A stretch of DNA of 64,000 bases from Selaginella moellendorffii (Eukaryota > Plantae > Lycopodiophyta), in NCBI RefSeq assembly GCF_000143415.4, contig NW_003314332.1, positions 868,001 to 932,000 of the forward strand, written 5' to 3'. This document shows positions 36,160 to 37,805 of this stretch, in pieces. The notes under the pieces were generated by a model that ran no database searches, was not told where the DNA came from, and saw only the letters and a list, made by a program, of their open reading frames with translations. The translations under genes were made by a program, and so were the position numbers. Position 1 is the first letter of the stretch, and every line of letters starts with the position of its first letter.

Positions 36160-37805
36160 CAATGGGGCTTTTCATATTTATCCTCTTGAAAACCATAGAG
36201 GTCCAGTTTCGACATGCTCGAAACTGGCAAAGAGCATATAGGGGGGTTGAGATGAAGGGAGGATCCCTGGAACTAGAGTGCGGTTCGGTTTTGTGCAGAT
36301 CAGATCAGGGAACTAGTGTCCGGTTCTGTGCTGCCCAAAGCCATGCCACTCACTCTGCAAACGCGTGCTCCCTATCCGTACTGGTGGTGAACTTCGCGCC
36401 TTATCCATGGTCCCCAGCCTCATCTCTCCCATGTGGTTGCATCTACAGATGTGAAGGACTTGAGTCGATCGTGAGATCAGTGAAGGTACACCACCCTTGC
36501 TTGATCTCCATCTGTATGACGCCTACAGTTTTCCAGAGATATAAGAAGCCCCTGGAGATGTACTGTCCTGGATCCCACAGTGCAGTGAACTGAGGAGTGT
36601 GCCGTCTCCGGTAATGGTGATGCTGCTGCTGCCTGGGAGTCCTCTCCTTGCTGCTGTGTGACTGATCCCCTCCAACTGGGATTGCTGTTTCCAGCCTCCC
36701 ATCAGGCCGTGCAAGTGTAGTGCCGCCACGCTAGTCCCACGGCCTCATACCAGTGTAGCCGTACCCTTGGTGCTATCCATCTGGAATCACAACCAAAGGC
36801 GAGCTGCTCCTTTCGGATCCGAGTTGAAGCTACGTTTCCGTACTCCAACAAGCTAGCCTGATGCAGCTTCTAACACGAGCCGTGCCCCTCGAAACATCCC
36901 ATACATCAAATGGCGTTGCTCCGAGTGCCTTGATCATGGTGGATCCACAACCAAGGCAAGAAAGGAATCAGTCAACACAGCTGTACCGTACAAATTGGGA
37001 CTTCAGTGTGCCGTCGAAAGTTGTTCCTTTGCCGATTGGGACTAGGTGTACAATCGGAGGGTAGGGAAGTGCTGCCACGTAGTTTGAAGGACCCGGTGCG
37101 TGTCGGAGAATAGTGTCCTTTGCATATTCAAACGAGCAGCCGTAACAGCGCCAAGCGAGTTGTCCCCTCCTTACGTGGAGCTTGGCTCTCCAGACCCCAA
37201 TAATCCAAACCCCAAGTGAATGAGGAAGGAAGGACGCTGCCGATGAGGTTCTGTGCAGCTAGTGTCCTTGGAAGAAGTTCCAGCAACCGTGGACTCCAAA
37301 GCCCCCAACTTGAACCATGTTCCGAAATTTGAACGTTTGGATCTTGCTCGTGAACCGTTGGATTGCCACGAAGTTTTGCTGGCGTGTGCTCCTTCGGAGG
37401 ATCTATCTTCCCACCGTTGCTATCGGCGAAAAGGTACGTGGTTCAGCCGCCACCGCAATCCCTAGGTCGTCCATAACCCTAGCCGCCACCAGAGATAGGG
37501 TCGCCTTGATCTCCTGATTCCTGGCTCCAAATCGCCTGTTCTTGGACTCAGAATGATCGTGGGGATGTGCTCTCTCCAGCCGTGAAATGGAATCGTGGAA
37601 AGTCCATGTGGAGAGCTTGCAGTGACTAAAAGAGTACTCTTGACGCTTTCTCGCTCATGGAACATGCAAATCCAGTGAAACCAAGGCACGGCTTGCTCTC
37701 AGCATCGTCCTTATTGCTCTCCTAGTCCTACTCCTACTCTGGATCAAGCACCAAAGTCGACTCTCAAGGCGCTCCTCTTCTCGCTAAACTTAGGGTTTCC
37801 TCTCT
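36160..37805 (-). mobile_element. Element E7: 1.65-kb non-autonomous retroposon (family C) with an A-like 3' tail
   Basis: Starts CAATGGGGCTTTT; shares the TTTCGACATGCTCGAAA hairpin and a 5' GGAAACCCTA; no long ORF on its own strand; flanked by target copies. Confidence 0.82.

What the first reader, a model, noticed from the sequence alone, without database searches (positions are those of the whole stretch)
36160..37805. Non-coding 1.65-kb passenger retroposon using the same rDNA site
Seen: flanked by the target duplication, same orientation, with a diverged family-A 3' tail (~85 nt) and a 5' GGAAACCCTA like family A. The body does not visibly match A or B and has no long sense ORF. No tRNA or 5S head was recognised. 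Inference: a SINE-like non-autonomous parasite mobilised by family-A ORF2 through 3'-tail recognition, conceptually like the R2-dependent SIDEs of Drosophila.
Basis: partly seen in the sequence, partly recalled or inferred. Interest (0 to 1): 0.75.

Follow-up and report, generated by a model that had tools for sequence, protein, structure and literature searches.

The report
Non-coding hitch-hiker of spikemoss rDNA LINE
A 1.64-kb gene-less element in a dead ribosomal RNA gene of the spikemoss Selaginella moellendorffii shares its first 10 letters, its folded tail and its landing site with the neighbouring LINE jumping genes. It most likely spreads by borrowing their enzymes, an arrangement known from animals that I did not find described for plant rDNA.

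Summary
On the minus strand, 36160-37800 is a 1,641-bp unit. It sits between two copies of the 15-bp 26S target (one copy has a mismatch) and between two 8.4-kb family-A LINEs, antisense to the rRNA.

Features shared with family A:
- It starts with the same GGAAACCCTA.
- Its 80-nt tail is 81-83% identical to A tails, against about 61% to family B.
- The tail's 10-bp hairpin is kept through a compensatory G-C to A-U change.

New here:
- Homology to A probably runs about 290 nt inward, into the end of ORF2. The tail therefore derives from a LINE, which makes the element SIDE-like rather than SINE-like.
- The 1.34-kb body matches nothing: no DNA, protein, Pfam, tRNA or Rfam hit. It has no codon periodicity and lacks the A-rich skew of LINEs.

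Most likely (0.65) it is a copy of a non-autonomous family mobilised in trans by an A-type ORF2 protein. The tail is 17-19% diverged and keeps states shared with B, so the partner may be a sister subfamily of A.

This scan has reported 1.65-kb look-alikes on other DNA of this genome; I did not check them. It is a new variant of a known kind, of moderate interest.

The parts
37814..37828 (-). 26S target copy on the 5' side of the element (exact 15-mer; shared with the 3' end of the upstream A copy)
   Evidence: read
37801..37813 (-). 13-nt 5' junction filler, different from the filler of both A copies (7 nt and 41 nt)
37791..37800 (-). 5' terminus GGAAACCCTA, identical to the 5' terminus of both full-length A copies; contains the plant telo-box-like AAACCCTA
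   Evidence: (3 occurrences, 0.08 expected)
37765..37777 (-). 13-mer (element nt 24-36) that is the exact reverse complement of A nt 15-27; a possible shared 5' motif in either orientation
37679..37687 (-). 9-mer (14 of 15 when extended) shared with A at almost the same distance from the 5' end (nt 114 vs 112)
   Evidence: weak, no colinear 5' homology by shuffle test
36451..37790 (-). orphan non-coding body of 1.34 kb
   Evidence: no match; no 3-nt periodicity (z -0.3); AT skew 0.05 vs 0.25-0.31 in the LINEs
36240..36450 (-). region of weak, colinear similarity (~53%) to the C-terminal coding end of A ORF2, including the C-run just before the A stop
   Evidence: taken alone only z 3.6 and tblastn E 0.019
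36160..36239 (-). 80-nt 3' tail, 81-83% identical to A tails, ending in CCCCATTG like A
36203..36227 (-). 10-bp hairpin with GCAUG loop; perfect Watson-Crick stem in this element
36145..36159 (-). 26S target copy on the 3' side (one mismatch)
37829..46225 (-). full-length family-A LINE (APE, RT, zf-RVT; ORFs broken), upstream neighbour on the minus strand
27727..36103 (-). full-length family-A LINE (ORFs broken), downstream neighbour on the minus strand
46586..47560 (+). 3' part of the 26S rRNA gene, where the stack of insertions ends; the junction is near position 2440 of the Rfam eukaryotic LSU model

Best explanation
36160-37800 (minus strand) is one copy of a long, non-coding, non-autonomous retroposon that descends from an A-type LINE and is copied by the proteins of such a LINE.

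Proposed mechanism (all inferred):
1. Its RNA starts at the same GGAAACCCTA as family A. It could come from a shared 5' start signal or from read-through along the head-to-tail stack.
2. Its ~80-nt tail, with a conserved GCUCUUU box, a 10-bp hairpin and the CCCCAUUG end, is bound in trans by the ORF2 protein of an A-type LINE.
3. The apurinic-type endonuclease nicks the fixed site of the 26S gene on the strand antisense to the rRNA.
4. Reverse transcription is primed there and the 15-bp target is duplicated.

Shown: the anatomy, the target copies, the shared ends, the hairpin with a compensatory change, and the absence of coding capacity.
Inferred: transcription, trans-mobilisation, and that the unit is multi-copy.
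For: - Ends and flanks: exact shared 5' 10-mer found only at the 5' ends of full-length units. Same 15-bp target copies on both sides.
- Independent insertion: its own 13-nt junction filler differs from the 7-nt and 41-nt fillers of the two A copies. This points to a separate insertion event, not a segmental copy.
- Tail: 81-83% identical to A while the sequence just upstream is only ~53%. That step is expected if only the tail is under constraint.
- Hairpin: 95% of cells paired across A, B and this element, against 21-55% when partners are slid, with 3 pairs changed on both sides. In this element G-C became A-U and G-U became G-C, giving a perfect stem, whereas one A copy with only the first change is mismatched.
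- No coding capacity: no sense ORF over 75 aa, no periodicity, and no protein or Pfam hit.
- Not a recent local deletion: A copies are 94-99% alike in the same stretch.
- Leads, unchecked: scan notes report 1.65-kb elements with the same start motif and tail on other pieces of this genome.
Against: - Only one copy is in the window, and I could not fetch any other. Multi-copy status rests on unchecked notes.
- The tail is 17-19% from the A copies here, so A as seen here may not be the helper.
- Beyond the first 10 nt the 5' ends show no colinear homology.
- No A copy in the window has intact ORFs.
- There is no evidence of transcription.
Confidence: 0.65

Rival explanations
1. It is a dead copy of a third, autonomous LINE lineage related to A. 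That copy landed at the site as a full-length element and then lost its interior by deletion in place, so it never moved as a 1.64-kb unit.
For: - The 3' ~290 nt look like the ORF2 end plus 3' UTR of an A-type LINE that is neither A nor B.
- Related LINE subfamilies exist in the genome.
- Only one copy was seen here.
Against: - The remaining 1.34 kb shows no codon periodicity (z -0.3), while A coding stretches of similar length give z 10-19.
- It is longer than A's ~770-nt leader, so a deletion would have had to spare only non-coding sequence.
- It has no protein-level similarity to A, B or 49 LINE proteins.
- Unchecked notes describe units of the same 1.65-kb length at other loci.
Confidence: 0.15
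2. It is a one-off chimeric retrocopy. An A-type reverse transcriptase began on a LINE tail and jumped to an unrelated cellular RNA, as R2 and L1 are known to do.
For: - The body is unrelated to the LINEs and lacks their A-rich composition.
- Template jumps by rDNA LINE enzymes are documented (PMC3414825).
Against: - A second jump back to the exact first 10 nt of A would be needed.
- A fresh chimera should carry a tail nearly identical to A, but this one is 17-19% diverged with a compensatory stem change.
- The body hits no protein family and no known RNA family.
Confidence: 0.08
3. It is a functional non-coding RNA gene or regulatory insert of the rDNA that merely resembles a retroposon.
For: A few 150-nt windows fold better than shuffles on the sense strand (z to -2.9).
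Against: - It sits in a decayed rDNA fragment inside a stack of at least nine insertions.
- It has retroposon hallmarks at both ends.
- It has no Rfam match.
- The structure signal is weak.
Confidence: 0.03

Closest known systems
SIDEs of Drosophila R2 and R1 (Eickbush and Eickbush 2012, PMC3414825)
   Same: Non-autonomous and gene-less. Made of LINE-derived ends. Inserted at the rDNA site of the helper with its target duplication and variable 5' junctions. Thought to be recognised through the 3' end.
   Different: SIDEs are short, carry the R2 ribozyme at the 5' end and depend on co-transcription with the 28S gene. This element is 1.64 kb, antisense to the rRNA, has no detectable ribozyme, shares only 10 nt plus short motifs at the 5' end, and carries a 1.34-kb orphan body. 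The host is a lycophyte and the helper is an L1-type LINE with an apurinic-type endonuclease.
Stringent-type LINE/SINE pairs such as eel UnaL2/UnaSINE1 and zebrafish LINEs (PMC1636434, PMC4176376)
   Same: Partner and LINE share a 3' tail whose stem-loop is what the ORF2 protein recognises. Here a 10-bp hairpin is kept with compensatory changes.
   Different: Those partners are short SINEs with Pol III heads and insert without a fixed site. Here there is no head, the element is long, and it has one fixed rDNA target. Recognition is untested.
Sadhu non-coding retroposons of Arabidopsis (PMC1401498, PMC2848041)
   Same: Plant, non-coding, non-autonomous, no Pol III head, and presumed to be moved by LINE enzymes.
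   Different: Sadhu has no known LINE-derived tail and no fixed target. From my own knowledge, not checked here, it ends in poly(A). This element has a structured tail without poly(A) and a single rDNA site.
R1-type site-specific LINEs with apurinic-type endonuclease (e.g. R1Bm, PMC1919474)
   Same: The helper family behaves like R1: a fixed large-subunit rDNA site, a ~15-bp target duplication and stacked insertions.
   Different: Different clade (plant L1-type with zf-RVT), different site, and opposite orientation to the rRNA.

Membership tests
SIDE (short internally deleted element of an rDNA LINE) | Inserted at the helper's rDNA site with the helper's target duplication | tested here: met
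   15-bp target copies at 36145-36159 and 37814-37828, the same as for A and B
SIDE (short internally deleted element of an rDNA LINE) | 3' end derived from the helper LINE's 3' end | tested here: met
   80-nt tail 81-83% identical to A; nhmmer alignment over ~287 nt, E 3.7e-17
SIDE (short internally deleted element of an rDNA LINE) | 5' end derived from the helper (in R2 SIDEs, the self-cleaving ribozyme) | tested here: inconclusive
   Only the terminal 10 nt and two short motifs are shared. There is no colinear homology and no ribozyme family in Rfam at E<=1
SIDE (short internally deleted element of an rDNA LINE) | Expression by co-transcription with the 28S/26S gene | tested here: not met
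   The element is antisense to the 26S fragment
SIDE (short internally deleted element of an rDNA LINE) | Several copies with variable 5' junctions | not testable with these tools
Only unchecked scan notes are available
SINE | Pol III head derived from tRNA, 5S or 7SL RNA | tested here: not met
   ARAGORN found none and Rfam found none
SINE | Short length (under about 700 bp) | tested here: not met
   1,641 bp
Stringent-type LINE partner | Shares the LINE's 3' stem-loop | tested here: met
   10-bp hairpin, 95% of cells paired, 3 pairs changed on both sides across three lineages
Stringent-type LINE partner | Mobilised in trans by the LINE's ORF2 protein, depending on the tail | not testable with these tools
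   Needs a retrotransposition assay

The most novel reading that the evidence does not exclude
A long-lived family of 1.65-kb non-coding retroposons in Selaginella has kept only the transcription-start motif (a telo-box-like GGAAACCCTA) and the hairpin tail of an L1-type LINE. It uses that LINE's proteins to home, antisense, to one nucleotide of the 26S rRNA gene. This would be the first LINE parasite of plant rDNA and a natural minimal definition of what this LINE needs in cis.
Probability: 0.55. Interest if true: 0.55.

Novelty: new variant of a known kind. Interest (0 to 1): 0.45.

Why it matters
Site-specific rDNA LINEs and their parasites have been worked out almost entirely in animals. 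I found no paper on a plant rDNA-homing LINE or a partner of one.

If this element is a propagating family, comparing it with family A marks the cis requirements of a plant L1-type LINE: a 10-nt start and an ~80-nt tail with one hairpin. It would also offer a small, gene-less vehicle that lands at one defined, multi-copy site.

It also shows that a LINE parasite can persist without a Pol III head and without rRNA co-transcription.

Tried and rejected
- Other copies, by DNA: a metagenome scan with the 18-nt hairpin core gave 75 loci, none with any blastn similarity to the element or to A, so all are chance hits.
- Other copies, by protein: the word-based protein search with the 143-aa antisense ORF found nothing. 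Selaginella appears in that collection only through NCBI gene models, so this blank says little.
- The search of earlier findings by sequence was blank.
- Body as decayed LINE coding sequence: rejected by tblastn against the window, against 49 LINE proteins, by Pfam and by periodicity.
- Body as a relic of a protein gene: the full HMMER search with the longest sense stop-free stretch gave one hit (P0050, E 5.6e-6). It is an 18-residue match counted six times in a tandem-repeat translation, so it is an artefact.
- Colinear 5' homology to A beyond 10 nt: not supported by shuffle tests.
- tRNA, 5S or ribozyme head: none.
- A structured body RNA: only a weak sense-strand signal.

Full report
**Setting**

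The window carries the 3' part of a eukaryotic large-subunit rRNA gene (46572-47560, plus strand) followed by a 5S gene at 49775-49894. The best protein relatives of the LINE ORFs are Selaginella moellendorffii gene models; SELMODRAFT_431488 is 97% identical. That fixes the organism.

Upstream of the 26S fragment lies a stack of retroelements, all on the minus strand and therefore antisense to the rRNA. Each is separated from the next by a copy of the 15-mer CTAGTCCGACTTTGT. This 15-mer occurs 12 times at up to 2 mismatches, against 0.11 expected. The rRNA sequence resumes directly after the last copy at 46586-46600.

The stack, reading:

| Coordinates | Unit |
|---|---|
| 1004-1210 | A fragment |
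| 1226-1450 | truncated A |
| 1466-23515 | full-length family B, split by a 13.5-kb DNA transposon at 3179-16688 |
| 23555-27041 | truncated A |
| 27057-27711 | truncated B |
| 27727-36103 | full-length A |
| 36160-37800 | the element in question |
| 37829-46225 | full-length A |
| 46248-46585 | truncated A |

Family A encodes an apurinic-type endonuclease, a reverse transcriptase and the plant-L1 zf-RVT domain. Its ORFs are broken in both full-length copies.

**The observation**

The element is 1,641 bp on the minus strand. Target copies flank it at 37814-37828 (exact) and 36145-36159 (one mismatch).

- **5' end.** It begins with GGAAACCCTA. On the plus strand that 10-mer occurs exactly three times in 64 kb against 0.08 expected. 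Each occurrence is at the 5' terminus of a full-length unit: two A copies and this element.
- **Junction filler.** Between the target copy and the 5' terminus lie 13 nt of filler. The fillers of the two A copies are different (7 nt and 41 nt), and the 41-nt filler consists of partial target repeats. Variable 5' junctions of this kind are typical of target-primed reverse transcription, as described for R2 and its SIDEs (PMC3414825). They argue that the three units arrived in separate events.
- **Tail.** The last 80 nt are 81-83% identical to five A tails and about 61% to the two B tails. The tail ends in CCCCATTG exactly as A does.
- **Heads.** No tRNA and no Rfam family was found.
- **ORFs.** The longest sense ORF from a start codon is 75 aa.

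**What is new about the 3' end**

nhmmer aligns the last ~287 nt of the element, not just the tail, to the last ~300 nt of A (E 3.7e-17 to 2.5e-9 for the four longer A copies; the 225-bp truncated copy aligns only over its last ~137 nt, E 9.5e-13).

In the multiple alignment the identity is about 53% over the upstream ~170 columns. It rises sharply in the tail, while A copies are 94-99% alike throughout. Taken alone the upstream part is only modestly significant: local-alignment z 3.6 with 7 of 1000 shuffles as good, and tblastn E 0.019. I call this extension probable, not certain.

In A this upstream part is the open C-terminal end of ORF2. A C-run of variable length just before a TAA moves the stop between about 90 and about 20 nt from the 3' end among copies. 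The roughly 88-nt 3' UTR of A therefore coincides with the well-conserved tail.

From this I infer that the element's 3' end descends from the ORF2 end plus 3' UTR of an A-type LINE, and that only the UTR part has been kept similar. The tail also shares states with B rather than A, namely a G in the GCUCUUUGC box and a G before the terminal C-run. This suggests it split from the A lineage before the present A consensus formed, or that it belongs with a sister subfamily. Selaginella proteins 82% and 89% identical to A ORF2 show such subfamilies exist.

**The hairpin**

A 10-bp stem with a 5-nt loop sits about 45-70 nt from the 3' end in A, B and the element.

- On the eight tails, 95% of cells pair, against 21-55% when the partners are slid by 1-3 columns.
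- Three pairs change on both sides, and no shuffle reaches the observed covariation score.
- Only three lineages are involved, so the counts are small.
- In the element one G-C pair has become A-U and a G-U pair has become G-C, giving a perfect stem. One A copy carries only the first of these changes and is mismatched there.

This is the pattern expected if the stem matters for propagation. It matches what is known for stringent-type LINEs, whose ORF2 proteins recognise a 3' stem-loop (PMC1636434, PMC4176376).

**The 5' end**

Beyond the first 10 nt there is no colinear homology to A. Two short coincidences stand out:

- A 13-mer at element nt 24-36 is the exact reverse complement of A nt 15-27. 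About 0.002 such matches are expected in the 300 x 400 nt compared (my estimate).
- A 9-mer, 14 of 15 when extended, lies at nt 114 in the element and nt 112 in A.

B has a related AAGGCGC core within its first 60 nt. These may be start-site or promoter motifs. The terminal AAACCCTA resembles the plant telo-box; that comparison is from my own knowledge and was not tested.

**The body**

The 1.34 kb between the ends matches nothing:

- blastn, nhmmer and six-frame tblastn against the rest of the window;
- tblastn with 49 LINE proteins, including five from Selaginella;
- Pfam on the ten longest stop-free stretches;
- a full HMMER search of 1.84 billion proteins with the longest sense stretch, whose single hit is a repeat artefact.

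The body shows no 3-nt periodicity (z -0.3), like A's 5' leader (z -0.2). A coding stretches of similar length give z 10-19. Its AT skew is 0.05, against 0.25-0.31 in A and B. It is therefore non-coding and not LINE-like in composition. Its origin is unknown.

**Interpretation**

The best reading (0.65) is a non-autonomous, LINE-derived retroposon moved in trans by an A-type ORF2 protein through tail recognition, landing at the same 26S site.

- **Compared with SIDEs.** It works like the SIDEs of Drosophila R1/R2 and like stringent LINE/SINE pairs. It fails two defining features of R2 SIDEs: co-transcription with the rRNA, and the ribozyme.
- **Compared with SINEs.** It fails both defining features of SINEs: a Pol III head and short length.
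- **Rivals.** These are a third LINE deleted in place (0.15), a one-off template-jump chimera (0.08) and a functional RNA gene (0.03). The residual 0.09 is for none of these.

**What I could not do**

The decisive test is copy number elsewhere in the genome.

- The metagenome scan returned only chance hits.
- No other collection holds plant genomes.

Notes of this scan, which are AI-written and which I did not check, report the same kind of unit on other pieces of this genome: a 1.65-kb non-coding element with the same start motif and ~80-nt folded tail at the same site (s1-366155), two such units in tandem (s1-349002), a 1.74-kb one (s1-433290), and further hitch-hiker families (s1-420542, s1-420485, s1-410753, s1-418144). 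The scan has therefore found this before on other DNA. These notes raised my estimate that the unit is multi-copy, but they are leads, not evidence.

**Literature**

Searches found no description of a plant rDNA-homing LINE or its parasite. A 2024 review of rDNA and transposable elements does not mention Selaginella (0 occurrences), and the passages my search returned name only R1/R2-type LINEs, an LTR lineage and non-autonomous elements carrying rDNA-derived sequence. Subscription journals and Repbase could not be searched.

Noticed in passing
window 36113-36159: Three tandem 16-nt partial copies of the 26S target lie between this element's 3' end and the 5' end of the downstream A copy (TRF period 16, 2.9 copies). 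They are probably junction slippage or abortive priming events.
   Followed up: partly
window 37829-37935, 27727-27833, 23555-23662, 46248-46355: A C-run of 6 to 8 residues just before the TAA of family-A ORF2 varies among copies and shifts the stop codon between about 90 and about 20 nt from the 3' end.
   Followed up: partly
window 37718-37765: The element's 5' region holds two target-like motifs: CTAGTCCTAC (9 of 10 to the target) and CAAAGTCGACTC (target-like in the opposite sense). They may be old junction filler absorbed into the element, or chance.
   Followed up: no
window 1-1003 and 15689-16691: The end of a second copy of the 13.5-kb DNA transposon (98% identical) interrupts another A fragment at the window start. 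The same transposon has therefore hit the LINE stack twice.
   Followed up: partly
window 46601-47160: The 26S fragment shows several transition differences from the universally conserved core as I remember it, for example in the GGGATAACTGGC and GATGTCGGCTC blocks. This suggests a decayed, probably methylated rDNA copy. It was not checked against a reference.
   Followed up: no
window 49775-49894: A 5S rRNA gene lies 2.2 kb downstream of the 26S end on the same strand, a linked 35S-5S arrangement.
   Followed up: no
window 59421-59442 and 9089-9103: Short tandem runs of the plant telomere-type unit (AAACCCT) occur inside other elements. AAACCCTA occurs 12 times in the window against 1.6 expected.
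   Followed up: no
window 42368-45453: The roughly 3-kb ORF1 region of family A has strong codon periodicity but no Pfam domain.
   Followed up: no
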